Positions 8,629 to 21,237 of a stretch of DNA of 64,000 nucleotides are shown piece after piece. The notes below the pieces were generated by a model. The model did no database searches, was not told the DNA's origin, and saw only the letters and a program-made list of their open reading frames with translations. The stretch lies in assembly GCA_950097015.1 (NCBI GenBank), contig CATNEN010000040.1, positions 285,452 to 349,451 of the forward strand, written 5' to 3'. The translations under genes and the position numbers were made by a program. The first letter of the stretch is position 1, and each line of letters opens with the position of its first letter. This DNA comes from Macrostomum hystrix (lineage: Eukaryota; Animalia; Platyhelminthes).

Positions 8629-9732
8629 TTAGTAGACGCCCTGCTTTAATTCCACGACGCTAATCCCGTCAAATTTAGACCCGGCCTGCACAAGGGTTCG
8701 TCCGACATCTGTGTCTAGCCAATCAGGTGCCAGCTCACGCAGGGTCGCAGCCAATCGGCGCCCAGTGACGTCATCAGGCATTACAGCGTGCAGCCAATCG
8801 TAGCGCGCCGGCCCGGATAGAATCAGAACACTGCGCGGCGGCATCGGAATGCGGATGTGAGCGGAGCCGGCTGATTGGCTGCCCGGACTGAGGGTCAGAT
8901 AGGTGGGGCTGCACAGGTTCAATGTGACAAGCCGTTCGCCCCACAACCAGGTGTCGTCAATGTGGGGATCAATGTGGGCGCCCATCTCGGCTCGGTAGTC
9001 CAAATTGCACAGCTCCACGGGGCGGAAGTCGGCCAGCCCGGGCAGGCGCAGCAGGCGGGGCAGAATGCCGGACCAGTAGGACGGCAGGCCAGTGAAACTA
9101 GCCGGGTTTACGCGGCGCTTCTTGAAGTTCACCTTCGGCCCGTAGTCCTGGCATGGTGCGGGCGTTTTAAGGGCGGGATAATCCCTCATCTGCTTGCCTT
9201 GACTCCACCTGAATCTCTCTCGACTCCCCCTGAATCTCTCTCGACTCCCCCTGAATGTCTCTCGACTCCACCTGAATCTCTCTCGACTCCCCCTGAATCT
9301 CTCTCGACTCCCTCTGAGTCTCTCTCGACCCCCCTGAGTCTCTCCCACCCACCAGAAAGCTACCTGCTTTCTCCGACCCGATTGAGACGGCGCCCAGGGC
9401 CGGCGATCGATTTCTGCCGCCAGTGCCGCCTCTTCCTCGGGACTGAGAAAATTCGGGAACACTCGAATGCCTTCGAGTCCCAGCACCTCGGCCTGACCCT
9501 CGCAGTGGCCGCTTTCGTGATCCGGCGTCGCCCGGATCGCCTGACAGTCGATGCAAAAGTGCAGAATTGGCAGCGCCTGGCGTGACTCAGTCTCACAGCT
9601 GGGCTGAGCAACCAGCGGCAGCTGTTTGGCAGCACAGCAGAGTCGGCAGGCGCGGATGCCCTTGCAGCCGCAGCCGATGCCGCAGCCGACGTCGACTGAT
9701 GAGGACGAGGAGACAGCTGGGCAGGCTGCCAT
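8629..9732 (-). CDS. ALKBH4: Alpha-ketoglutarate-dependent dioxygenase ALKBH4 (295 aa); exons 9364-9732 and 8629-9147
   Basis: CGCKGIRxCxxC N-terminal motif; SQSGRRKQ|DYGPKVNF; IDPHIDDTWLWGERLVTLNL; RYDWLHAV; RLAATLREL. Phase-0, 216-nt GT-AG intron. Confidence 0.93.
   Translation of the reverse strand: MAACPAVSSSSSVDVGCGIGCGCKGIRACRLCCAAKQLPLVAQPSCETESRQALPILHFCIDCQAIRATPDHESGHCEGQAEVLGLEGIRVFPNFLSPEEEAALAAEIDRRPWAPSQSGRRKQVAFWWVGETQGGRERLRGSRERFRGSRERFRWSRETFRGSRERFRGSRERFRWSQGKQMRDYPALKTPAPCQDYGPKVNFKKRRVNPASFTGLPSYWSGILPRLLRLPGLADFRPVELCNLDYRAEMGAHIDPHIDDTWLWGERLVTLNLCSPTYLTLSPGSQSAGSAHIRIPMPPRSVLILSGPARYDWLHAVMPDDVTGRRLAATLRELAPDWLDTDVGRTLVQAGSKFDGISVVELKQGVY
9195..9345. repeat. Intronic minisatellite, 21-bp unit (cccctgaatctctctcgactc)
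   Basis: About 6 copies inside the ALKBH4 intron. Confidence 0.85.
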
Positions 9733-9744
9733 GTGAGTTGAAGG

Positions 9745-11872
9745 AATAGAATGGATTGCTAATCTATCCCATGGGTGAGGGAATATAATGGATTGCTAAT
9801 CTATCCCATTGGTGAAGAAATATAATGGATTGCTAATCTATCCCATGGGTGAGGGAATAGAATGTATTGCTAATCTATCCCATGGGTGAAGAAAAAGAAT
9901 GGATTGCTAATCTATCCCATGGGTGAAAGAATAGAATGGATTGCTAATCTATCCCATGGGTGAAGGAATGGAATGGATTGCTAATCTATCCCATGGGTGA
10001 AGGAATAGAATGGATTGCTAATCTATCCCATGGGTGAGGGAATAGAATGGATTGCTAATCTATCCCATGGGTGAGGGAATAGTGTGGATTGCTAATCTAT
10101 CCCATGGGTGAGGGAATAGTGTGGATTGCTAATCTATCCCATGGGTGAAGGAATAGAATGGATTGCTAATCTATCCCATGGGTGAAGGAATAGAATGGAT
10201 TGCTAGTCTATCCCATGGGTGAGGGAATAGAATGGATTGCTAATCTATCCCATGGGTGAGGGAATAGAATGGATTGCTAATCTATCCCATGGGTGAAGGA
10301 ATAGAATGGAAAGCTAATCTATCCCATGGGTGAGGGAATAGAATGGATTGCTAGTCTATCCCATGGGTGAGGGAATAGAATGGATTGCTAATCTATCCCA
10401 TGGGTGAGGGAATAGAATGGATTGCTAATCTATCCCATGGGTGAGGGAATAGTGTGGATTGCTAATCTATCCCATGGGTGAGGGAATAGAATGGATTGCT
10501 AATCTATCCCATGGGTGAGGGAATAGAATGGATTGCTAATCTATCCCATGGGTGAAGGAATAGAATGGATTGCTAATCTATCCCATGGGTGAGGGAATAG
10601 AATGGATTGCTAATCTATCCCATGGGTGAGGGAATAGAATGGATTGCTAATCTATCCCATGGGTGAAGGAATAGAATGGAAAGCTAATCTATCCCATGGG
10701 TGAGGGAATAGAATGGATTGCTAGTCTATCCCATGGTCGAGGGAATAGAATGGATTGCTAATCTATCCAATGGGTGAGGGAATAGAATGGATTGCTAATC
10801 TATCCCATGGGTGAAGAAATAGAATGGATTGCTAATCTATCCCATGGGTGGAGGAATAGAATGGAAAGCTAATCTATCCCATGGGTGAGGGAATAGAATG
10901 GATTGCTAATCTATCCCATGGGTGAGGGAATAGAATGGATTGCTAATCTATCCCATGGGTGAGGGAATAGAATGGATTGCTAATCTATCCCATGGGTGAG
11001 GGAATAGAATGGATTGCTAATCTATCCCATGGGTGAAGGAATATAATGGATTGCTAATCTATCCCATAGGTGGAGGAATAGAATGGAAAGCTAATCTATC
11101 CCATGGGTGAGGGAATAGAATGGATTGCTAATCTATCCCATGGGTGAGGGAATAGAATGGATTGCTAATCTATCCCATGGGTGAAGGAATAGAATGGATT
11201 GCTAATCTATCCCATGGGTGGAGGAATAGAATGGAAAGCTAATCTATCCCATGGGTAAGGGAATAGAATGGATTGCTAATCTATCCCATGGGTGAGGGAA
11301 TAGAATGGATTGCTAATCTATCCCATGGGTGAGGGAATAGAATGGATTGCTAGTCTATCCCATGGGTGAGGGAATAGAATGGATTGCTAGTCTATCCCAT
11401 GGGTGAGGGAATAGAATGGATTGCTAATCTATCCCATGGGTGAGGGAATAGTGTGGATTGCTAATCTATCCCATGGGTGAGGGAATAGAATGGATTGCTA
11501 ATCTATCCCATGGGTGAGGGAATAGAATGGATTGCTAATCTATCCCATGGGTGAAGGAATAGAATGGATTGCTAATCTATCCCATGGGTGAAGGAATAGA
11601 ATGGATTGCTAGTCTATCCCATGGGTGAGGGAATAGAATGGATTGCTAATCTATCCCATGGGTGAGGGAATAGAATGGATTGCTAATCTATCCCATGGGT
11701 GAAGGAATAGAATGGAAAGCTAATCTATCCCATGGGTGAAGGAATAGAATGGATTGCTAATCTATCCCATGGGTGAAGGAATAGAATGGATTGCTAATCT
11801 ATCCCATGGGTGAGGGAATAGAATGGAAAAGCTAATCTATCCCATGGGTGAGGGAATAGTGTGGATTGCTAA
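9745..11872. repeat. Large minisatellite, 37-bp unit (ggaatagaatggattgctaatctatcccatgggtgag)
   Basis: More than 50 tandem copies, starting about 12 nt upstream of the ALKBH4 ATG. Confidence 0.97.
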
Positions 11873-11975
11873 AATAGCCTACACAGTGAAGGAATAAAAT
11901 TGATCGATTGTGACAAATTAAATAGTGAAAAACTATTACCTAGCAGAGAAGCAGGGTCAAAGACTTGTGCCCCTG

Positions 11976-12337
11976 TCATTTGTCAGTCTTTTGATGTTGT
12001 TGCTGCTGTTTAGCGTACTGAAAAGAATTCAGATGCCGTATTGTCTAAAATCAATCTGAATAACAGTTTATCGATTCGGAATCTAGATGAATGTTATGCC
12101 TACACAAACTAGCGAGCCTATACAAACCTTGTTCACTACCCAGTCAGCATCGAGCAGAGCCCGATCGATAATCTGGCGGATCCTATCCGGATCGGTCTCG
12201 TCGGAGTGACTGTTGTAGGCCTGGCGAATATAATTAGAATAGTAGGGCCTGGCGTTGCTGGGCAGGGTGCGCACCAGTCTGAGCAAGTGCCTGTACAGCT
12301 GCAGCGGAGTGCGGATAGTGCGGAGGCCAACGCCTGC
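11976..12337 (-). CDS. LYRM9: LYR-motif protein 9; exons 12128-12337 and 11976-12017; no ATG at the 5' end
   Basis: PLQLYRHLLRLVR...YIRQAYNSHSDETDPDRIRQIIDRALLDADWVVNK|YAKQ...* closely follows LYRM9. The frame starts at acceptor ttttag|GCA, whose TAG is an in-frame stop. Confidence 0.88.
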
Positions 12338-12434
12338 CTAAAACAGAATGCAAGCAAACACATGCTAATATTTCTACTTATAGTAGTGTGTTCATAAAAT
12401 GACATTTTTCAGTTTTTCTAGCTCAAGTTTAAGT

Positions 12435-12800
12435 GGAGGTGAGTGACAGAGCGGTTAACGCGTCTGCCTCTCGTGCCAAGGTCCCGGAGTTCGATTCCGA
12501 ACGAGGCCACATTTATTTGGGGCGCAGCCGCGGAGAGAAGGCTTGGGGGCTTGTCGTACAATTTACGCCCTTGAGGGCCAACTTCCAAGGCACAGTGAGA
12601 GTGTACACTGCCTGACGATGAGAAAGTTAGGGCAGATGTACACACCTGTGAGTGTGTGCCTGCGTTTCAGTATCTATGTGCGTGTGCTCAGGGGTCAGCG
12701 AATTGTGCAGAATCTTCTCCTCGCTGTCTGCGGGTCTAATGTCACTAAATGATGTCCCATCGCAGACAGCCCTCCTGCTATTAATATATTTATTACTATT
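12435..12800 (+). mobile_element. tRNA-derived SINE, family B, flanked by a ~76-bp direct duplication
   Basis: A-box-like TGACAGAGCGG and B-box GGAGTTCGATTCC; body homologous to 51050-51366; flanks 12359-12434 and 12809-12887 are direct repeats. Confidence 0.75.
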
Positions 12801-13299
12801 TAATCAGACACGTGCTAATATTTCTACTTATAGTAGTGTGTTCATAAAACGGTTTTCAGTTTTTTCTTCTAGCTCACTTTTAAGTAATTGACACATCAAA
12901 GTCCATCACAATGATGCAAATTGGCAAATTATTTTCTAGTTTTTTATAGAAAGGTAGTTAAATTTGACAGCTTAATGGTCAGGTATAAAGCACAATCAAT
13001 CGATAGGCAAAACAAAAACCCGGTCACTTTTTTAACTGAATAGAAAACAGTAATTCTGAGTGAAAAACAAGCACTGTGATTCCAAGTAACTGGGGAAATC
13101 AGAACGATTGGCAATAAAAAGCAACGCAAATATAATTATTTCACCGACACTATTATGAATAGTTATTCTAACGACGCCACTAGAGCATATTAGCTGGTGA
13201 CTTGAGAAAAAAAGCCAGCTCAAACCCCCTTAACTGTCCTAGACCTGGCACACGAGTGGTGAGAGACCTGCTACAGCCCTCCCACAAGCTAGCTAGTGG

Positions 13300-13760
13300 G
13301 CGGGGGTTGTAGTCTAGTGGGGGTTGTAGCCTAGCTGGGGTTGTAGACTAGTGGGGTTGTAGCCTAGCGGGGGTTGCAGCCTAGTGAGGGTTGCAGCCTA
13401 GTGGGGGTTGTAGCCTAGCGGGGGTTGCAGCCTAGTGGGGTTGTAGCCTAGTGGGGTTGTAGCCTAGTGGGGGTTGCAGCCTAGTGGGGGTTGTAGCCTA
13501 GCGGGGGTTGCAGCCTAGTGGGGTTGTAGCCTAGTGGGGTTGTAGCCTAGTGGGGGTTGCAGCCTAGTGGGGGTTGTAGCCTAGCGGGGGTTGCAGCCTA
13601 GTGGGGTTGTAGCCTAGTGGGGGCTGTAGCCTAGTAGGGTTGTAGAATAGTGGGGGTTGCAGCCTAGTGGGGTTGTAGCCTAGTGGGTTTGTAGACTAGT
13701 GGCGGTTGTAGCCTAGTGGGGTTGTAGAATAGTGGGGGTTGCAGCCTAGTGGGACTTGTA
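13300..13760 (+). repeat. Minisatellite, 16-17-bp unit (ggggttgtagcctagt), matching the SINE-A head
   Basis: Unit equals the first bases of the SINE-A head and runs directly into a SINE-A copy. Confidence 0.9.
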
Positions 13761-13990
13761 GCATAGTGGTTAGAGCGCCGGACTCACGACTTAAAGATAG
13801 AGGGTTCGATTCCCAACTAGAAAAATTTGTGTCCTCAAGCAAGACAGCCTGTGTCCTTATCTGCGCCATAATTAGCTGGGGTAATTAATGGTGGTGTGGC
13901 ATTCCACCAGTCCATGGACTAGACGCAGCCTTCAGATGCGCAGCGCAATAGCTGCGGCTGTGCTGTAGGCTGCAAATCTGGCCCGATTGA
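13745..13990 (+). mobile_element. tRNA-derived SINE, family A (degenerate copy)
   Basis: TAGTGGTTAGAGCG...GGGTTCGATTCCC head; body shared with 33035-33349. Confidence 0.8.
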
Positions 13991-14216
13991 TCAACTATTG
14001 CCATATTAATTAATTAAAATTTTGCAATACTAAATGACAAAATTGCAAGACTTTTATGAAGGCATAATTATTTTGGTCATCGAGCACTACTAAAAGTAGT
14101 TTCTATCTGAATAATATGTACAGACTTTTTGGCCTGGCAAAAAGACAAATCAGAGGATTGACATGCTTTTTGAAGTCAAACACTATATTCCTAAATGATT
14201 GTATTGATTCGTGCTA

Positions 14217-15097
14217 TCAGGATGACTGCAAAGCCCATGTCCTGGTCACCAGATCCAGCTCCATCTTCAGCAATTGATTCTGCTCTCGCTGACTCTCCAG
14301 AGCATTGCGCAACTTGGCCGCGTCACTGCCATTCTCCTCGGCATCACTGTCACAGCCGGTCGACGCTGCTTCAAGCTGAGCTATGCGCCGCTTAGCCGCC
14401 TCCAGCTGCGCCTCGGCCCGGTCCAGCCGACTGTCCGAATCGTCGCAGCGTCGGAGGGCGCCGTCTAGCTGGCGACGCAATTCGTCCAATTGGCGAGCTG
14501 TTTGAGCTGCGAGCCAATCCGAGTCGCACAGCTTGCGCTCAGCTGACCGGCGCTGTTCCTGCAGCGAATGCCAGTTTTGTTAGTTTTTTTCAGTTTTCAA
14601 GCTTCGAGCTTTCAAGTATTCGCTGGCTAAGTGACCAGGGCACGGATTCGAACTCATGACCCTTGGTGGGAGAGTGGAACCTCAGAACGTAATAAAACAT
14701 ACTAATAGTACTGTAAGATTTATTTCGGCGCAGACTGTAGAATCTAAGCTACAGATATTGTATTCACCACAGTATTAAAATTATTCCTAACCTGTTCCAT
14801 GTGAAGCAGCTGCATCACCTGCTGCATCTCAGCTTTGAGTTCCTCTTCCTGAACCAAAAACAGCTCCTGTTGTTCTACTACTGGTAGAGAGGGCATGCCC
14901 TCCTCGGCGGAAAAGTACAGCCGCAGCGGCTGCAGCCTCGACCTGGTCCTGCAAGCCGGACAGATGGACTGGCCGCCGCAGCTGCGCAGCCAGTCGCCAA
15001 CGCAGCCAGAGTGAAACACGTGGCCGCAGTTGGGCAGGGCGGAGCAGTCGCTCTCGCCGTCCAGCTGAGCGCGACAGATCGGACAGTTTATTTGAGC
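14217..15097 (-). CDS. TRAIP: RING E3 ligase with coiled coil, TRAIP/NOPO-like; exons 14792-15097 and 14217-14558; no ATG at the 5' end
   Basis: N-terminal C3H2C3 RING (CPIC...CGHVFHSGCV...CPAC) followed by LRLYFS and a coiled coil; phase-0 intron; frame starts at ccgcag|GCT CAA ATA AAC TGT with an in-frame TAG just upstream. Orthology is not certain. Confidence 0.7.
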
Positions 15098-15212
15098 CTG
15101 CGGATCAAGCAGGACACATGCGCTTTTCTAGACATATAGGTTTAACGAGATCAACTACAGAAAGACTCTACTAAGGTACCTATAGTACGCTTTTACACTT
15201 GAAATATTCATA

Positions 15213-15660
15213 GGAGGGTTTAGCCTAGCCTAGCGGTTAGAGCAGGGTCGGCAAACTCCGGCCCGCGGGCCAGATGGGGGCCCTCGAAGCTCCCAAATCC
15301 GGCCCGTTGCCCCTTCTGACATCTACAGTGTCCTGTTTCATCTCTCCCGTGTCTAATCTCTCCTGTGGCTCATCTCTCCCCTGTCTTATCTCTCCCGTGT
15401 CTAATCTCTCCCCTCTCTTATCTCTCCCGTGTCTAATCTCTCCCGCCTTATCTCATATTTATACAGTCAATGCGGCCCGCTGTCGTCTTTTAGGTTCTCT
15501 CTTTGGCCCGCCAGCAAATAAGTTTGCCTACCCCTGGGTTAGAGCGTCGGACTCACAACTTGAAGGTCGGGGGTTCGATTCCAGACTCCCTTGGAACAAT
15601 TTGTCCTTTAGCAACACTCTGCATTGCTTCTGTTCTCACAGTTGTTAAACGGGAATTAAT
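15213..15660 (+). mobile_element. SINE family A copy interrupted by a hAT-like MITE
   Basis: Head split at ggttagag; resumes cgtcggactcacaacttgaaggtcgggggttcgattcc. Confidence 0.8.
15243..15536. mobile_element. Non-autonomous hAT (Charlie-like) MITE, 294 bp
   Basis: TIRs CAGGGTCGGCAAACT / AGTTTGCCTACCCCTG; subterminal CGGCCCGCGGGCC; perfect 8-bp TSD ggttagag (15235-15242, 15537-15544). Confidence 0.9.
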
Positions 15661-16622
15661 TGGGATTAAGATATCTCGCAAAACTGGTTGCTTCAACGAA
15701 TTTTAGAAAGCTTAGTTTATGAGTAATCGATCTTCATTTTATCCTTTATTTATCACGAAGCACAATAGCCTGTCAATAGCTATCTCGTGACTAACTCAAT
15801 TTTACAGTCAAAATCAAAGTTTTCTAATCAAGTATAAGTGTATTACGAGAACTATGTAGAATGGCTTCACTAACAAATCAGTAGACCAAGCTGTAGCCTA
15901 AATCGGTTGGTTGGTTGGTGATTGGTTGCTATTGTGATTCATGATAAATAAACGAAAAATTAAGAAAAATTATTCATGAATAAAGCTTTCTGAAATTCGT
16001 TAGAAAGTTTCTATTCCTATCTAGTGCGTTATTCCGGGAAAATCTGCATTTAATAAATTTTTCCAAGAAACGAAAACGAATTCTTGCAGCCAAGTGGTTA
16101 GAGCTTTATAATTATTGTCAGCACAAGGTAAAAGTTTGAGCAAGACACTTAATTCCACTAGTACTCGTACTTCAGCTCGCCCAGCTGTAGAATACGATAA
16201 TCCCCATGTCCATGGACTGAACAGCCATGTCATTCATTTCTATCTTTAGTTTTGAATACCGCTCCTTCATGTAATGAAGTCCAATTGAGAAATGAGAAAA
16301 GAGCAGGTCTGTCAGAGCAGCAAACATGAGTCCAGTCAGTCGCACTTAATGCTGTTTATTTATTCCTTGTCAGTTATTTAGTTAGTTAAATGATCATACA
16401 TAACGAAATGCCAAAAAATTTACACATTCCTGCGGCTAAAAGTAGTAATGGTTTGTAATGGTTTCAAGCATTCAAGCATGGTTTAGCAGGAACTTATCTT
16501 AAAACGATGTTAGATAACATTGGACAGTGATTTTATTTAGCAAATTACAATACCTTCCAAAGAGTTGACGAAATCATGAAACAACAAGCAGAAGACAAAG
16601 AGAAATGCAGCAAAATGCTGGC

Positions 16623-19600
16623 TTAACGGCTCGCTTTCTTCCCCTTCCCCCTTGTCTTTGGCTTCCCGCCAGAGTCGGCGCTGCCGCTGCCGCAGCCACC
16701 TATGGCTCGGAACCAGTTCCTCTGCTGCTGCTGCTGATGCTGAGCATTGCGACTCCCACTACCGGCCACTTCCAGTCGTTTCTGAACTCGATTCAACGAC
16801 TGCTCAGCGGCCCTCTGGGCGGACTCCAGCCGCTCCTCCTGCAGCACGGCTGACACGTCCGGCTCCAGGGCGGCGATGCGGTCGCGGTAACTGGCGATGA
16901 CCGATTTGGGCACAATGCGCAGCTTCACAGGGATTGGCGCCTTGCGCACAATCTGCTTCAGCAGCGGCCGCTCCGCCTCTCCGGCCAGGCTGATGGCCAG
17001 GCCCTGCTTGCCGGCGCGGGCTGTGCGGCCCACCCGGTGAGTGTACACCTGCCAGGTGGGGTTTGGCTCAAATCTTAAATGGGAAACACGCGATAACTCC
17101 TAAAAACTCATAAATACCAACGGAAAACACACAGGAAAATCCGCAACGAAAAGCAACCTAAAATCCCAATGAAAAAATCACAATCCTGAATGGAAAAGAC
17201 GCCACAATACTAATAGAAACCATGCTAATGAAATCATCCTGATGAAAACCATGCTAAAATCCCAAATGGAAAACACGCTAAAATCCTGATGAAAACCATG
17301 CTAAAATCCCAAATGGAAAACACGCTAAAATCCTGATGAAAACCATGCTAAAATCCCAAATGGAAAACACGCTAAAATCCTGATGAAAACCATGCTAAAA
17401 TCCCAAATGGAAAACACGCTAAAATCCCAAATGGAAAACACGCTAAAATCCCAAATGGAAAACACGCTAAAATCCCAAATGGAAACCAGCTAAAATCACA
17501 ATGGAAAACACGCTAAAATCCCAAATGGAAACCAGCTAAAATCCCAATGGAAAACACGCTAAAATCCCAAATGGAAACCAGCTAAAATCACAATGGAAAA
17601 CACGCTAAAATCCCAAATGGAAAACACGCTAAAATCCCAATGGAAAACACGCTAAAATCCCAAATGGAAAACACGCTAAAATCCCAAATGGAAACCAGCT
17701 AAAATCACAATGGAAAACACGCTAAAATCCCAAATGGAAAACACGCTAAAATCCCAAATGGAAACCAGCTAAAATCCCAATGGAAAACACGCTAAAATCC
17801 CAAATGGAAAACACGCTAAAATCCTGATGAAAACCATGCTAAAATCCCAAATGGAAAACACGCTAAAATCCCAATGGAAACCAGCTAAAATCCCAATGGA
17901 AATCATGCTAAAATCCTGAAGAAAACCATGCTAAAATCCCAAATGGAAAACACGCTAAAATCCCAAATGGAAACCAGCTAAAATCCCAATGGAAACCAGC
18001 TAAAATCCCAATGGAAACCAGCTAAAATCCCAATGGAAAACACGCTAAAATCCCAATAGAAATCATGCTAAAATCCTGAAGAAAACCATGCTAAAATCCC
18101 AATGGAAAACACGCTAAAATCCCAATAGAAATCATGCTAAAATCCTGAAGAAAACCATGCTAAAATCCCAAATGGAAAACACGCTAAAATCCCAAATGGA
18201 AACCAGCTAAAATCCCAATGGAAAACACGCTAAAATCCCAAATGGAAAACACGCTAAAATACTAAATGGAAACCAGCTAAAATCCCAAATGGAAAACACG
18301 CTAAAATCCCAATAGAAATCATGCTAAAATCCTGATGAAAACCATGCTAAAATCCCAAATGGAAAACACGCTAAAATCCCAAATGGAAAACACGCTAAAA
18401 TCCCAAATGGAAAACACGCTAAAATACTAAATGGAAACCAGCTAAAATCCCAAATGGAAAACACGCTAAAATCCCAATAGAAATCATGCTAAAATCCTGA
18501 TGAAAACCATGCTAAAATCCCAAATGGAAAACACGCTAAAATCCCAAATGGAAAACACGCTAAAATCCCAAATGGAAAACACGCTAAAATCCCAAATGGA
18601 AAACAAGCTAAAATCCTAAATGGAAAACACGCTAAAATCCCAATGGAAAACACCATAAGGCGGGAAGCACACTAAAACGCAATGAGGTACACCTAAGCAG
18701 TAACCAAATGGTCGCCAGAAGTAATGTGTGCACTAGTCAGCAAATGACCTTGAGCGAATCCGGCAGGCTGTAGTTAATGACGGTGCGCACACCCTCGATA
18801 TCCAGGCCTCTGGAGACCAGATCCGTGGCCAGCAACACGCCAACCTCGGCCTTATGGAATCTGTCCAGGGCCTCCAATCGTTGGACCTGACTCAGGGAGC
18901 TGTGCAGCTCGGCGCAGGACACGCCCAGCAGGCCCAGCAGGACGTGCATTCGGTGGCACAGCCGGCGGGTGGGGCAGAACACAATGCAGCGCTCGTTGAA
19001 GCTGCGCTGAACCAGTGCGGCAACAACGGCCTCCCGATCTGACTCGCGCTGCTGCCGGATGCGGACAAACTCCTGCTGCAGGCGGAGGGTGACGTCGGCC
19101 CGGTCGCTTAGGAACAGCTTCACCGGATTGCGCAGTGCCATGGCGGACAGCTCGCGAACATCGTCTGTCATAGTGGCGCTGAATAGCAGCACCTGGCCGG
19201 AAATGGGTAATGAGTATGGGTTAAGGGTAATGAGCATTGGATAGGGGTAATGAGCAACGGAGAAGGGTAATGAGCAACGGAGAAGGGTAATGAGCAACGG
19301 AGAAGGGTAATGAGCATCGGAGAAGTGTAATGAGCATTAGGGAAGGGTAGTGAGCAACGAAGAAGGGTTATGAGCATTGGATAGGGGTAATGAGCATTGG
19401 ATAGGGGTAATGAGCATCGGAGAGGGTAATGAGCATCGGAGAGGGTAATGAGCATCGGAGAGGGTAATGAGCATCGGAGAGGTAATGAGCATCGGAGAGG
19501 GTAATGAGCATCGGAGAGGGTTATGAGCATCAGAGAGGGTTATGAGCATCAGAGAGGGTTATGAGCATCAGAGAGGGTTATGAGCAGTTGGTACAAAGAC

Positions 19601-20875
19601 TGGCAGGGACGTTAAAGCACTAATGTGGAATACAGAAACGAATCTCACCTGTCTGGTAGGTGAGCACAGGCGGACAATTTCTTTAATCTGCTCAATGAAG
19701 AACTCGTCAATAAGCTTGTCAGCTTCGTCTAGCACCAGGATTTCAATGTTGCGCAGGTGAAAACTTGGCGCATTGTGCGCGTGATCGATGAGTCGGCCTG
19801 GAGTGGCAACGACAATATCCGGGCCCTTGAAAAAAAGGAAATTAAAACAAGAACATTTTGGTTCAAGCCGAAAATTACTACTAACAAGTAGTTTATTAAG
19901 ACCAACAACAGCCTGTAGAAGTACACTGACCTGCCTGAGCGCAGCCTCCTGGCCTCTCAGATCCAAACCGCCGGCCGAGAGGCTCAGCGACACCCGCCTG
20001 CCGCAGTAGCGCAGCAGCTGCTCAGCCACGCTGTGGATCTGCACCGCCAGCTCCCTGGTGGGGCTCAGCACCAGGACTCGGGTCACGGGCGGCCCGGCCG
20101 GCTTATAGAGCAGGCGCTCGATGACGGGCAACAGGAAGGCGGCCGTCTTGCCGCTGCCGGTGCGGGCGCAGGCGCAGATGTCGCGCCCGGCCAGGGCCAC
20201 GGGAATGCAGGCCGCCTGGATTGGCGTCGGGCGCGGCCAGGCGAGCTCGGCCAGGGCTCGGTGCAGCGGCCGGGACAGGTTCAACGCCAGGAAGCTGGAG
20301 CCGGCCGGCAGGTCCGGCTTGTCGATCTCGTCGGCGAAGCCCGGCGTAGCGGACGCGCCGGCCCGTTTGCGAGCCTTCTTGGCCTTCAGCTTGACTTCGT
20401 CGGCGTCGACCAAGTCAGGATCGACGGCGACTGCAGCGGCAGGTTCCGTCAGGTCCTGATCCGCGTCCGGCTCAGATTCTGCCGGCTTCCGAAGACTCTG
20501 CAGTCGGCGCTGAATGAGAGCGTCGACGCTGGTCTTCTCGCCGTGGGCTCGCAGTCGAATAGGCTCGCCAGGCGGCTCTGGCTGGGGATACGGGTGGGGA
20601 GGCTTCGCTGCGGACGCCGCCGGCAGGTCGAATTCGAAGTCGGGATTCAGCGCGACTTCTTCGTCATCGTCGTCGTTATCAGCGTCGGTGTCTTGCTTAT
20701 CAAGGCTTTCGTCTCGCATAGAGATATCGGCTGACTCCTGCTGCTGCTGCTGTTGCTGGCGCAGCTTCCTCTTGGCGCCAGCTTTCTGCTGCTTCTTTTT
20801 CTTCTTCGCGTCGCGCCGGCTGTCTAGCGGTGCCTTGCCGGCAGGCCGGGAAGGCTTCACTGGCTGCGGCTTCAT
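16623..20875 (-). CDS. DDX27: DEAD-box RNA helicase DDX27/Drs1; exons 19931-20875, 19649-19825, 18749-19192, 16623-17048
   Basis: PTPIQAACIP, ARTGSGKTAAF, SPTRELA, ATPGRL, DEAD, SAT, ATDLVSRGLD, HRVGRTARAG motifs; all introns phase 0 GT-AG. The C-terminus may extend through an undetected further exon. Probable 5'-UTR intron at 20877-20989. Confidence 0.92.
17215..18655. repeat. Intronic minisatellite, ~23-24-bp unit (aaaatcccaaatggaaaacacgct) with variants
   Basis: Fills DDX27 intron 3. Confidence 0.95.
19205..19585. repeat. Intronic minisatellite, 19-20-bp unit (gggtaatgagcatcggaga)
   Basis: Fills DDX27 intron 2. Confidence 0.93.
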
Positions 20876-21237
20876 GCTAGATGGAAATGCTGCTTGATGC
20901 GGATTGGGGCCGCGGGCTGCGGAACGGGTGGATTTTACACGTTGCTACAGTTGATATATTAATGTAATTTTAACACCTTATCTATTCACCTGTTTGGTTT
21001 TCACTTCTCTCGCTTCTTTCTTTGCTATTTCTTGTTGCTGTTTTTTCAAATGCCCCCCACCAATATCCTCAGTCGACAGGCAACGCTTGGTGTCTGCTAT
21101 AGAGCAGGGGCAACACTAAAAGCCGTAGCAGCTATCCTTCAGGAAGGGTTCAGGCGTTACCAAAAGGTGTTAAAAAGGAATCGTGCAAAAATGTTTGACT
21201 GTTTGATCGTTAGATTGTTATGCCTTCCTAATTCTCG

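What the first reader, a model, noticed from the sequence alone, without database searches (positions are those of the whole stretch)
11976..15097. LYRM9 and TRAIP-like coding sequences lack an ATG: the spliced leader may supply the start codon
Seen: both frames begin exactly at a phase-0 acceptor (ttttag|GCA GGC GTT at 12337; ccgcag|GCT CAA ATA at 15097), with in-frame stops just upstream and no in-frame ATG. Adding a single Met gives M-AGVGLRTIRT-PLQLY and M-AQIN-CPIC, whose N-termini are about as long as the orthologs'. The nearest donor-like site for TRAIP (15178-15179) gives only an out-of-frame or stop-containing exon. Established: flatworm spliced-leader RNAs end in AUG, which can act as the initiator. 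Inference: these are trans-spliced downstream cistrons translated from the SL AUG.
Basis: partly seen in the sequence, partly recalled or inferred. Interest (0 to 1): 0.75.

Follow-up and report, generated by a model that had tools for sequence, protein, structure and literature searches.

The report
Start codons borrowed from spliced leader
Two small, conserved genes of a Macrostomum flatworm (an LYRM9-type protein and a RING-finger ligase) have no start codon in their own DNA and most likely take it from the AUG that ends the trans-spliced leader RNA, a flatworm habit known since 2006, so these are new examples rather than a new mechanism.

Summary
On the minus strand, both reading frames begin exactly at a phase-0 AG acceptor (12337 and 15097). 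Each has an in-frame stop just upstream and no usable ATG. The LYRM9-like CDS has no Met codon at all. The RING gene's first Met comes after the RING domain.

The genome carries spliced-leader (SL) RNA genes whose exon ends ...TTGCATG|GTAAG. Both genes are single copy here.

In M. lignano, sequence conservation starts precisely at the same acceptors. No upstream exon is conserved, and the GenBank models of the RING orthologues are 5'-partial from the same alanine codon.

Two M. lignano RING copies now have a genomic ATG at exactly that spot. One follows the last 10 nt of the SL, fossilised in the genome. In the other, the acceptor CAG has become ATG.

I reached no RNA evidence for these two genes, so trans-splicing at these sites is inferred, at about 0.8. 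The "downstream cistron" part is only possible: the repeat-adjusted spacer is about 0.8 kb.

It is unconserved and expected by chance.

The mechanism is known (Cheng et al. 2006). This scan has already confirmed it for several other genes of this genome. Interest is low.

The parts
12128..12337 (-). LYRM9-like exon 1: 70 codons (AGVGLRTIRTPLQLYRH...), starting at the first base after the AG acceptor, with no Met codon
   Evidence: Translation. Pfam Complex1_LYR E=5.7e-15. 57-60% identity to LYRM9 proteins. 87% aa identity to the M. lignano locus L009:16092-16301. Single copy in the genome.
12338..12340 (-). TAG that is both the 3' splice acceptor (AG at 12339-12338) and an in-frame stop directly before codon Ala1 of LYRM9
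   Evidence: The M. lignano orthologue has ttccag|GCA GGC at the same position and phase.
12018..12127 (-). LYRM9 intron, 110 nt, phase 0 (AAG|gtttgt ... ttttcag|TAC)
11976..12017 (-). LYRM9-like exon 2: 13 codons plus TGA stop
14792..15097 (-). RING-finger (TRAIP-like) exon 1: 102 codons (AQINCPICRAQLDGES...), RING-H2 at residues 5-49, first Met at residue 67
   Evidence: Translation. Pfam zf-RING_2 E=7e-11. 66-72% identity to M. lignano P0004/P0005.
15098..15099 (-). AG of the 3' splice acceptor (ccgcag|GCT), phase 0. The proposed trans-splice site.
   Evidence: Alignment with the M. lignano paralogues.
14559..14791 (-). RING gene intron (CAG|gttagg ... gctgcag|GAA). The same position is kept in M. 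lignano.
14217..14558 (-). RING gene exon 2: 113 codons rich in E/Q/R/L (looks coiled-coil by eye, not computed) plus TGA stop
   Evidence: 50% identity to the M. lignano exon 2.
15197..15211 (-). Rival only: 15-nt in-frame ATG mini-exon candidate (MNISS) with donor AGT|gtaaaa at 15196
   Evidence: It lies in the unique 138 nt before the acceptor (repeat boundary near 15236). It is not conserved in M. lignano.
12374..12387 (-). Palindromic TATA-like 14-mer ACTACTATAAGTAG, 37-50 nt upstream of the LYRM9 acceptor. A possible promoter or transcription-factor site. A second copy at 12824-12837 comes from a 450-nt duplication.
   Evidence: Conserved in M. lignano. 121 exact genomic copies against 0 for the reversed control, with unrelated flanks.

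Best explanation
Both genes are transcribed with an outron. The spliceosome replaces the outron with the Macrostomum spliced leader (SL) at the AG acceptors before 12337 and 15097.

The SL exon ends in AUG immediately before its GU donor, and both acceptors are in phase 0. The mature mRNAs therefore read ...UUGCAUG|GCA GGC... and ...UUGCAUG|GCU CAA.... Translation starts at the SL's AUG and gives M-AGVGLRTIRTPLQLY... (84 aa, LYRM9-type LYR protein) and M-AQINCPIC... (216 aa, RING-H2 ligase with a C-terminal helical tail).

Shown here:
- the gene anatomy
- the SL RNA gene
- conservation of acceptor and phase
- the lack of any conserved upstream exon
- genomic ATGs at that exact position in paralogues

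Inferred: trans-splicing at these two sites in this species, and use of the SL AUG by the ribosome.

Whether the pre-mRNA is polycistronic or each gene has its own promoter with a short outron is left open.
For: 1. SL RNA gene. The published 35-nt Macrostomum SL (PMC8629364) matches this genome exactly at 23 or more sites. Array copies (e.g. L005) and one dispersed copy (L001) of those read continue as an SL RNA gene...TTGCATG|GTAAGA, with three hairpins and a U-rich Sm-like site.

2. LYRM9. The CDS has no Met codon, and its acceptor is itself an in-frame TAG. It is the only LYRM9 gene in the genome. Orthologues elsewhere start M-QQN/HQS-IRTP, so Met belongs a few residues before IRTP.

3. M. 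lignano LYRM9.
- It has the same acceptor and phase (ttccag|GCA GGC).
- An in-frame TAA lies upstream with no in-frame ATG.
- Identity is 85% in the exon but 33% in the 30 nt before it.

4. RING gene models. The M. lignano GenBank models P0004 and P0005 are 'partial' and begin APINCPIC. Those models were cut at mapped SL-read peaks (PMC5730564). The RING-B paralogue model in L009 also starts at ttccag|GCG CCC.

5. Genomic ATGs at the same position.
- M. lignano RING-A has TTATTGCATG, the SL's last 10 nt, directly before Ala1 in both homeologues.
- RING-B in L016 has ATG in place of the acceptor CAG.
- Distant paralogues in this genome have their own Met 2-9 residues before the first Cys.

6. 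No upstream exon. No block is conserved upstream of either acceptor apart from a 12-nt motif, and no ATG..GT mini-exon is shared between species.

7. Literature.
- The flatworm SL AUG works as an initiator (Cheng et al. 2006, as cited in PMC9851317 and PMC12582326).
- In M. hystrix and M. cliftonense, 10-20% of genes are trans-spliced.
Against: - No RNA evidence for these two genes. Neither protein search returned a transcript-derived protein of this species, and no retrocopy with an SL-exon junction exists in the genome.
- The window's acceptors fit the published trans-acceptor motif [T/C]TNCAG only partly (TTTTAG and CCGCAG).
- For the RING gene, an in-frame ATG mini-exon with a GTAAAA donor 99 nt upstream cannot be excluded on splice-site strength. 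The confirmed donors of these two genes are themselves weak (gtttgt, gttagg).
- The RING-A gene-model start in M. lignano may partly be an artefact of SL trimming, because an SL tail is encoded in that genome.
Confidence: 0.8

Rival explanations
1. Each gene has a small, missed, cis-spliced 5' exon that carries its own ATG. For the RING gene this would be ATG AAT ATT TCA AGT|gtaaaa at 15211-15197, giving MNISS-AQINCPIC.
For: - The candidate exists, is in frame, lies in unique DNA, and would leave a 99-nt intron similar in size to the 110-nt LYRM9 intron.
- An earlier report on this genome found one claimed SL-AUG case that really had a tiny upstream ATG exon (s1-316733).
- Confirmed donors here are weak, so donor strength does not exclude it.
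Against: - Such candidates arise about 1.3 times per 100 nt by chance.
- LYRM9 has only 6 candidates in 1.9 kb, and none has a GTRAG donor.
- None of these candidates is conserved in M. lignano, where upstream DNA shares no block with the window.
- The RNA-based M. lignano models start at the acceptor codon.
- Paralogues with a genomic ATG place it directly before Ala1, not five codons upstream.
Confidence: 0.1
2. The SL-AUG reading is right, but the genes are not downstream cistrons. Each has its own promoter just upstream, a short outron, and is trans-spliced as a monocistronic transcript.
For: - A TATA-like palindrome (ACTACTATAAGTAG) lies 37-50 nt before the LYRM9 acceptor. It is the only upstream element conserved in M. 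lignano.
- That motif is strongly enriched genome-wide: 121 copies against 0 for the reversed control, with unrelated flanks.
- A 10/14 relative (CGTACTATAGGTAC) lies 56-69 nt before the RING acceptor.
- In M. lignano most trans-spliced genes are not in operons (about 40% are; PMC8629364).
Against: - Six genes in a row share the strand (first-reader note s1-085143; ORFs).
- The repeat-adjusted spacer before LYRM9 is about 0.8 kb, within the 1-kb operon rule.
- The function of the motif is untested.
Confidence: 0.4
3. The genes are not translated from an AUG at this position at all. Either they are decaying pseudogenes, or translation starts at a near-cognate codon or at the internal Met67 of the RING gene.
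For: There is no ATG in the DNA. CTG codons exist in the 11 in-frame codons before the RING acceptor.
Against: - Both ORFs are intact and single copy.
- LYRM9 exon 1 differs from M. lignano at 13 synonymous and 9 non-synonymous codons, with the core invariant.
- Starting at Met67 would delete the RING domain.
- LYRM9 has an in-frame stop at the acceptor, so no upstream near-cognate start is possible on unspliced RNA.
Confidence: 0.04

Closest known systems
SL-AUG-initiated mRNAs of Schistosoma mansoni (Cheng, Cohen, Ndegwa and Davis 2006, J Biol Chem 281:733; cited in PMC9851317 and PMC12582326)
   Same: The flatworm SL ends in AUG. The acceptor is in frame with the ORF and the recipient gene lacks its own initiator. 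That study reported more than 40 cDNAs that need the SL AUG.
   Different: This is a different flatworm order (free-living Macrostomorpha) and different genes. Use of the AUG is inferred from genome comparison, not shown by cDNA or translation assays.
SL trans-splicing in Macrostomum (Wudarski et al. 2017, PMC5730564; Ustyantsev and Berezikov 2021, PMC8629364; the M. cliftonense / M. hystrix genome paper, PMC10468722)
   Same: The 35-nt SL is identical. The SL RNA gene has a GTAAG donor, three hairpins and an Sm-like site. Many conserved genes are trans-spliced, some in operons. The 2023 paper notes that the terminal ATG is probably a start codon.
   Different: As far as I could read, those papers do not list LYRM9 or this RING gene. 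LYRM9 is not among the gene models listed for the M. lignano locus.
slORFs, ORFs created by SL addition (slORFfinder, PMC9851317)
   Same: It is the same concept: the SL supplies the start codon of the main ORF.
   Different: slORFs were called from ribosome footprints in nematodes, Oikopleura and trypanosomes. No flatworm footprint data were used there or here.
Relict spliced leaders in dinoflagellate genes (Slamovits and Keeling 2008, recalled from memory, not read here)
   Same: SL sequence is found encoded in the genome in front of a gene, taken as a trace of reintegrated trans-spliced mRNA. This resembles the TTATTGCATG tail before M. lignano RING-A and the dispersed SL-fused copies in this genome.
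   Different: In RING-A only 10 nt of SL remain, the cis intron is retained, and the fossil supplies the start codon.

Membership tests
Flatworm genes initiated at the spliced-leader AUG | The species has an SL RNA whose leader exon ends in AUG directly before the GU donor | tested here: met
   The 35-nt SL matches exactly at 23 or more sites. The gene reads ...TTGCATG|GTAAGA with three hairpins.
Flatworm genes initiated at the spliced-leader AUG | The 3' acceptor is in phase 0 with the conserved ORF, so that SL-AUG plus exon gives the protein | tested here: met
   AG|GCA GGC at 12337 and AG|GCT CAA at 15097. The same phase is seen in M. lignano.
Flatworm genes initiated at the spliced-leader AUG | No genomic initiator: no in-frame ATG before the conserved domain and none in a conserved upstream exon | tested here: met
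   LYRM9 has no Met codon. The RING gene's first Met is at residue 67. In-frame stops lie upstream, and there is no conserved upstream block. One unconserved mini-exon candidate remains for the RING gene.
Flatworm genes initiated at the spliced-leader AUG | The mRNA carries the SL joined at that acceptor | not testable with these tools
   No transcript-derived protein or contig of this species was returned. The only indirect support is that the RNA-based M. lignano models start at the homologous codon.
Flatworm genes initiated at the spliced-leader AUG | Translation starts at the SL AUG | not testable with these tools
   This needs N-terminal proteomics, ribosome profiling or a reporter assay.
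LYRM9 (LYR-motif / Complex1_LYR superfamily) | LYR-family domain with the L-Y-R tripeptide, in a small protein of about 80 aa | tested here: met
   PF05347 E=5.7e-15 over residues 10-63. The sequence PLQLYRHLLR is present. The predicted protein is 84 aa.
LYRM9 (LYR-motif / Complex1_LYR superfamily) | Closest named relatives are LYRM9 rather than other LYRM proteins | tested here: met
   Only three hits were returned, at 57-60% identity. The one named hit is 'LYR motif-containing protein 9'. No reciprocal search was done.
TRAIP (TRAF-interacting protein, RING E3) | RING-H2 at the extreme N-terminus followed by a coiled coil | tested here: met
   The C3H2C3 pattern starts at residue 5. The E/Q/R/L-rich tail was judged by eye only.
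TRAIP (TRAF-interacting protein, RING E3) | Orthology to TRAIP: best named relatives are TRAIP, the length is about 400-470 aa, and C-terminal interaction motifs are present | tested here: inconclusive
   The protein is only 216 aa. The Atlas feature search puts TRAIP and TRAIP-like clusters at ranks 7-12 (score 0.90), behind generic RING clusters. PDB hits are generic RING domains.
Downstream cistron of a flatworm operon | Same-strand neighbour with a short (1 kb or less, repeat-adjusted) intercistronic spacer | tested here: met
   The spacer before LYRM9 is 1879 nt, of which about 1080 nt are dispersed repeats, leaving about 0.8 kb (rule from PMC8629364). The spacer before the RING gene is 1525 nt and was only partly examined.
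Downstream cistron of a flatworm operon | A polycistronic precursor RNA spans the genes | not testable with these tools
   No RNA data were available. The M. lignano gene names (g1, g5) number copies in a sequence cluster, not positions in a transcription unit.

The most novel reading that the evidence does not exclude
In this RING gene family, the supply of the start codon has switched back and forth between 'donated by the spliced leader' and 'encoded in the genome', by two routes visible in M. lignano.

1. RING-A. The last 10 nt of the SL (TTATTGCATG) are hard-wired directly before codon 2 of a gene that still keeps its cis intron. This suggests a short repair or conversion tract templated by trans-spliced, not yet cis-spliced RNA or cDNA, rather than ordinary retroposition.

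2. RING-B. A change of the acceptor CAG into ATG at the very same three bases turns an SL-dependent gene into a self-starting one in a single step.

If general, this would be a route by which SL-dependent genes escape or enter dependence on trans-splicing.
Probability: 0.45. Interest if true: 0.5.

Novelty: new member of a known kind. Interest (0 to 1): 0.25.

Why it matters
For annotation, ATG-less genes like these are missed or marked 'partial' by standard pipelines. The LYRM9 orthologue is not among the gene models listed for the M. lignano locus, and the RING orthologues are labelled partial. An SL-aware ORF caller would recover them.

For biology, it adds two conserved genes whose expression depends entirely on trans-splicing: a small LYR-family protein and a RING ligase. 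The mechanism itself has been established since 2006, and this scan has already seen it for several other genes of this genome.

The side observation in M. lignano, an SL tail or an ATG replacing the acceptor, is the more interesting lead. It shows how dependence on the SL AUG can be gained or lost.

Tried and rejected
- SL-exon junctions (SL tail plus the first 15 nt of each exon, up to 3 mismatches) as retrocopies in the genome: none found.
- Transcript-derived proteins of this species: the word search returned only three distant LYRM9 proteins and one M. lignano RING protein. No RNA contig could therefore be fetched for either gene.
- Joined protein: the exon 1 + exon 2 protein, with or without Met, was never built or searched. 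Exons were searched one by one by reference. Exact look-ups of the mature protein in transcript assemblies were therefore left out.
- Operon evidence from gene names: I first read 'Mlig001038g5' as the fifth gene of a transcription unit. I rejected this because g1 and g5 are near-identical copies on different contigs.
- Repeat origin of the mini-exon: I tested whether the MNISS mini-exon lies inside a transposon. It does not. The repeat ends near 15236.
- Rfam gathering scan of 11000-17000: nothing found. The tRNA-like stretches seen by eye are not intact tRNAs.
- TRAIP identity: PDB and Atlas searches gave only generic RING matches and weak TRAIP leads.
- Papers naming Mlig001038: none found.
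- The large representative-protein search and structure prediction were not used, because the question did not depend on them.
Full report
**What is there**

The window is part of contig C40 of a 220-Mb Macrostomum-type flatworm genome. Earlier notes of this scan call it M. hystrix; I did not verify the species name. Both genes of the finding lie on the minus strand.

The first gene has two exons, 12337..12128 and 12017..11976, separated by a 110-nt phase-0 intron. It encodes AGVGLRTIRTPLQLYRH...VVNK plus YAKQQQQHQKTDK.
- Exon 1 matches Pfam Complex1_LYR (E=5.7e-15).
- Its only database relatives are 57-60% identical LYRM9-type proteins.

The second gene has exons 15097..14792 and 14558..14217.
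- It encodes a RING-H2 finger beginning at residue 5 (zf-RING_2, E=7e-11).
- The tail is rich in E/Q/R/L.
- 'TRAIP-like' is only a lead. TRAIP clusters appear at ranks 7-12 of the Atlas feature search, and PDB hits are generic RING domains.

**Check of the observation**

It is correct.
- LYRM9: ttttag|GCA GGC GTT. The acceptor's TAG is itself an in-frame stop, and the whole CDS has no Met codon.
- RING gene: ccgcag|GCT CAA ATA AAC TGT. An in-frame TAG lies 11 codons upstream with no ATG between. The first Met is residue 67, behind the RING domain.

One correction applies. An in-frame candidate mini-exon exists 99 nt upstream of the RING acceptor (ATG at 15211, donor AGT|gtaaaa at 15196). By enumeration, such ATG...GT phase-0 candidates occur 39 times in the 2.9 kb upstream, so one nearby is expected by chance. 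LYRM9 has only six candidates in 1.9 kb, none with a GTRAG donor.

**Does this species have the required leader?**

Yes.
- The published 35-nt Macrostomum SL (PMC8629364) occurs exactly at 23 or more sites.
- In the tandem copies it continues ...TTGCATG|GTAAGA.
- It folds into three hairpins with a U-rich Sm-like site (z=-3.1).
- The AUG is therefore the last three bases of the leader exon.
[quoted passage not shown] **Comparative evidence**

A word search used the stop-to-stop frame around RING exon 1, given by reference. It found one protein, M. lignano BOX15_Mlig001038g5, labelled 'partial', which begins APINCPIC. A near-identical copy, g1, lies on another contig.

Their loci (L009, L016) share gene order with the window:
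- DEAD-box helicase
- RING-A
- a second RING paralogue (RING-B) that the window lacks
- in L009 only, LYRM9 (one search found no LYRM9 within L016)

M. lignano LYRM9 is not among the gene models listed for that locus. It has ttccag|GCA GGC at the same position and phase, an in-frame TAA upstream and no in-frame ATG. Identity to the window is 85% in exon 1 but 33% in the 30 nt before it. Of the codons that differ, 13 are synonymous and 9 are not.

RING-B in L009 also starts at ttccag|GCG CCC ATT. BLASTN between the upstream spacers of the two species finds nothing except a 12-nt motif. No candidate mini-exon is shared.

Both genes are single copy in the window's genome, so the ATG-less LYRM9 is the only one the animal has.

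**Paralogues that fix the position of Met**

- In both M. lignano homeologues, RING-A reads cccGGTTATTGCATG|GCC CCC ATC AAC TGT. The ten bases before Ala1 are the last ten of the SL, there is no AG, and the 10-mer occurs nowhere else in the 21-kb locus or the 64-kb window.
- The cis intron is retained at the same place as in the window, so this is not a plain retrocopy.
- RING-B of homeologue L016 reads cacttcATG GCG CCC where L009 has cacttcCAG|GCG CCC.
- More distant RING paralogues in the window's own genome have their own Met 2-9 residues before the first Cys.

All of this places the initiator Met exactly where the SL AUG would land in the window's gene.

One caveat: the M. lignano models were cut at peaks of SL-trimmed reads (PMC5730564). 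For RING-A, the genomic SL tail could mimic such a peak.

**What could not be shown**

No transcript of either gene of this species was reachable. Neither search returned a transcript-derived protein. No SL-exon junction is preserved as a retrocopy. As required, I did not build or search the joined exon 1 + exon 2 (+Met) protein. Trans-splicing at 12337 and 15097, and initiation at the SL AUG, therefore remain inferences. I put them at about 0.8 jointly.

**Operon or own promoter**

The spacer from the RING stop to the LYRM9 acceptor is 1879 nt. About 1080 nt of it are dispersed repeats (13293-13989 and 12417-12800). That leaves roughly 0.8 kb, inside the 1-kb repeat-adjusted rule used for M. 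lignano operons.

On the other hand, the only conserved upstream element is a palindromic TATA-like 14-mer (ACTACTATAAGTAG) 37-50 nt before the LYRM9 acceptor.
- It has 121 exact copies in the genome, against none for the reversed control.
- Its flanks are unrelated, which suggests a promoter or factor-binding site.
- A 10/14 relative lies 56-69 nt before the RING acceptor.

I first took the gene names g1 and g5 as operon evidence. They number copies within a sequence cluster, not positions in a transcription unit. The 'downstream cistron' part is therefore open.

**Comparison with what is known**

The mechanism is the one described for Schistosoma mansoni by Cheng et al. 2006. There the SL AUG is in frame in 28% of trans-spliced transcripts and is required by more than 40 cDNAs (as summarised in PMC9851317). 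PMC12582326 also notes that all reported flatworm SLs end in ATG.

This scan has already followed up several cases in the same genome, some with transcript contigs: POP5, TAF10, XPA, TMEM160, RFC4, OTUD6 and others. One claimed case was wrong because of a tiny upstream ATG exon. That note is why I enumerated mini-exons.

These two genes are therefore new members of a known kind.

**Verdict**

- Novelty is low.
- The most interesting by-product is the M. lignano evidence that an SL-donated start codon can become genome-encoded, either by capture of an SL tail or by an acceptor-to-ATG change.

Noticed in passing
L009:9991-10000 and L016:7991-8000 (M. lignano, GCA_002269645.1): The last 10 nt of the spliced leader (TTATTGCATG) are encoded in the genome directly before codon 2 of the RING-A gene in both homeologues. 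There is no AG acceptor there, and the gene's cis intron is retained. It looks like a fossil SL tail that now supplies a genomic ATG.
   Followed up: partly
L016:11590-11592 versus L009:12978-12980: In one M. lignano homeologue of the RING-B paralogue, the trans-splice acceptor CAG is replaced by ATG at the same three bases (cacttcCAG|GCG versus cacttcATG GCG). This gives the same M-APITCLIC protein without the SL.
   Followed up: partly
window 12374-12387 and 12824-12837 (minus strand); L009 about 16024-16037: The palindromic 14-mer ACTACTATAAGTAG lies 37-50 nt upstream of the LYRM9 acceptor and is conserved in M. lignano. It has 121 exact copies in the 220-Mb genome against 0 for the reversed control, with unrelated flanks. 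It is a candidate promoter or factor-binding motif.
   Followed up: partly
L017 (G000:C15:9000-18999) and L005: The SL RNA genes sit inside the 11.6-kb ribosomal DNA repeat. On one strand the order is 18S, 5.8S, 28S, a U1 snRNA gene, then the SL RNA gene about 300 nt further on. The arrays are on contigs C15, C17 and C42.
   Followed up: partly
L002, L003, L004, L023-L034 (own genome, dispersed): At least a dozen dispersed copies of the full SL are fused to non-SL-RNA sequence. One partner sequence (GCTTCAACTCGCTTCG...) recurs five or more times. These look like retroposed trans-spliced RNAs. Most also share about 10 nt (GCCGTAAAGA) 5' of the published 35-mer, so the true leader exon is probably longer than 35 nt.
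   Followed up: partly
L009:16092-16301: The M. lignano LYRM9 orthologue (87% aa identity) is not among the gene models listed for this locus. The likely reason is that an ORF without ATG was not called as coding.
   Followed up: no
window 12352-12885 and 13286-13804: The LYRM9 outron holds a dispersed about 380-nt repeat (12417-12800). It is flanked by a long direct duplication: 48 nt at 94% in the repeat scan, about 83 nt by eye. Further upstream is a 17-nt-period minisatellite (GGGGTTGTAGCCTAGTG)n that abuts a tRNA-like stretch.
   Followed up: partly
window 8629-9732 (minus strand): The next co-oriented ORF (367 aa, own ATG directly after a roughly 60-nt-period satellite) contains an in-frame run of RERFRGS-like heptad repeats in its middle. 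Its family was not examined.
   Followed up: no
window 20875-20885 (minus strand): The DEAD-box helicase upstream has its own ATG one base after a possible acceptor (tctag|cATG AAG). If it is trans-spliced there, the SL AUG would be out of frame with it.
   Followed up: no
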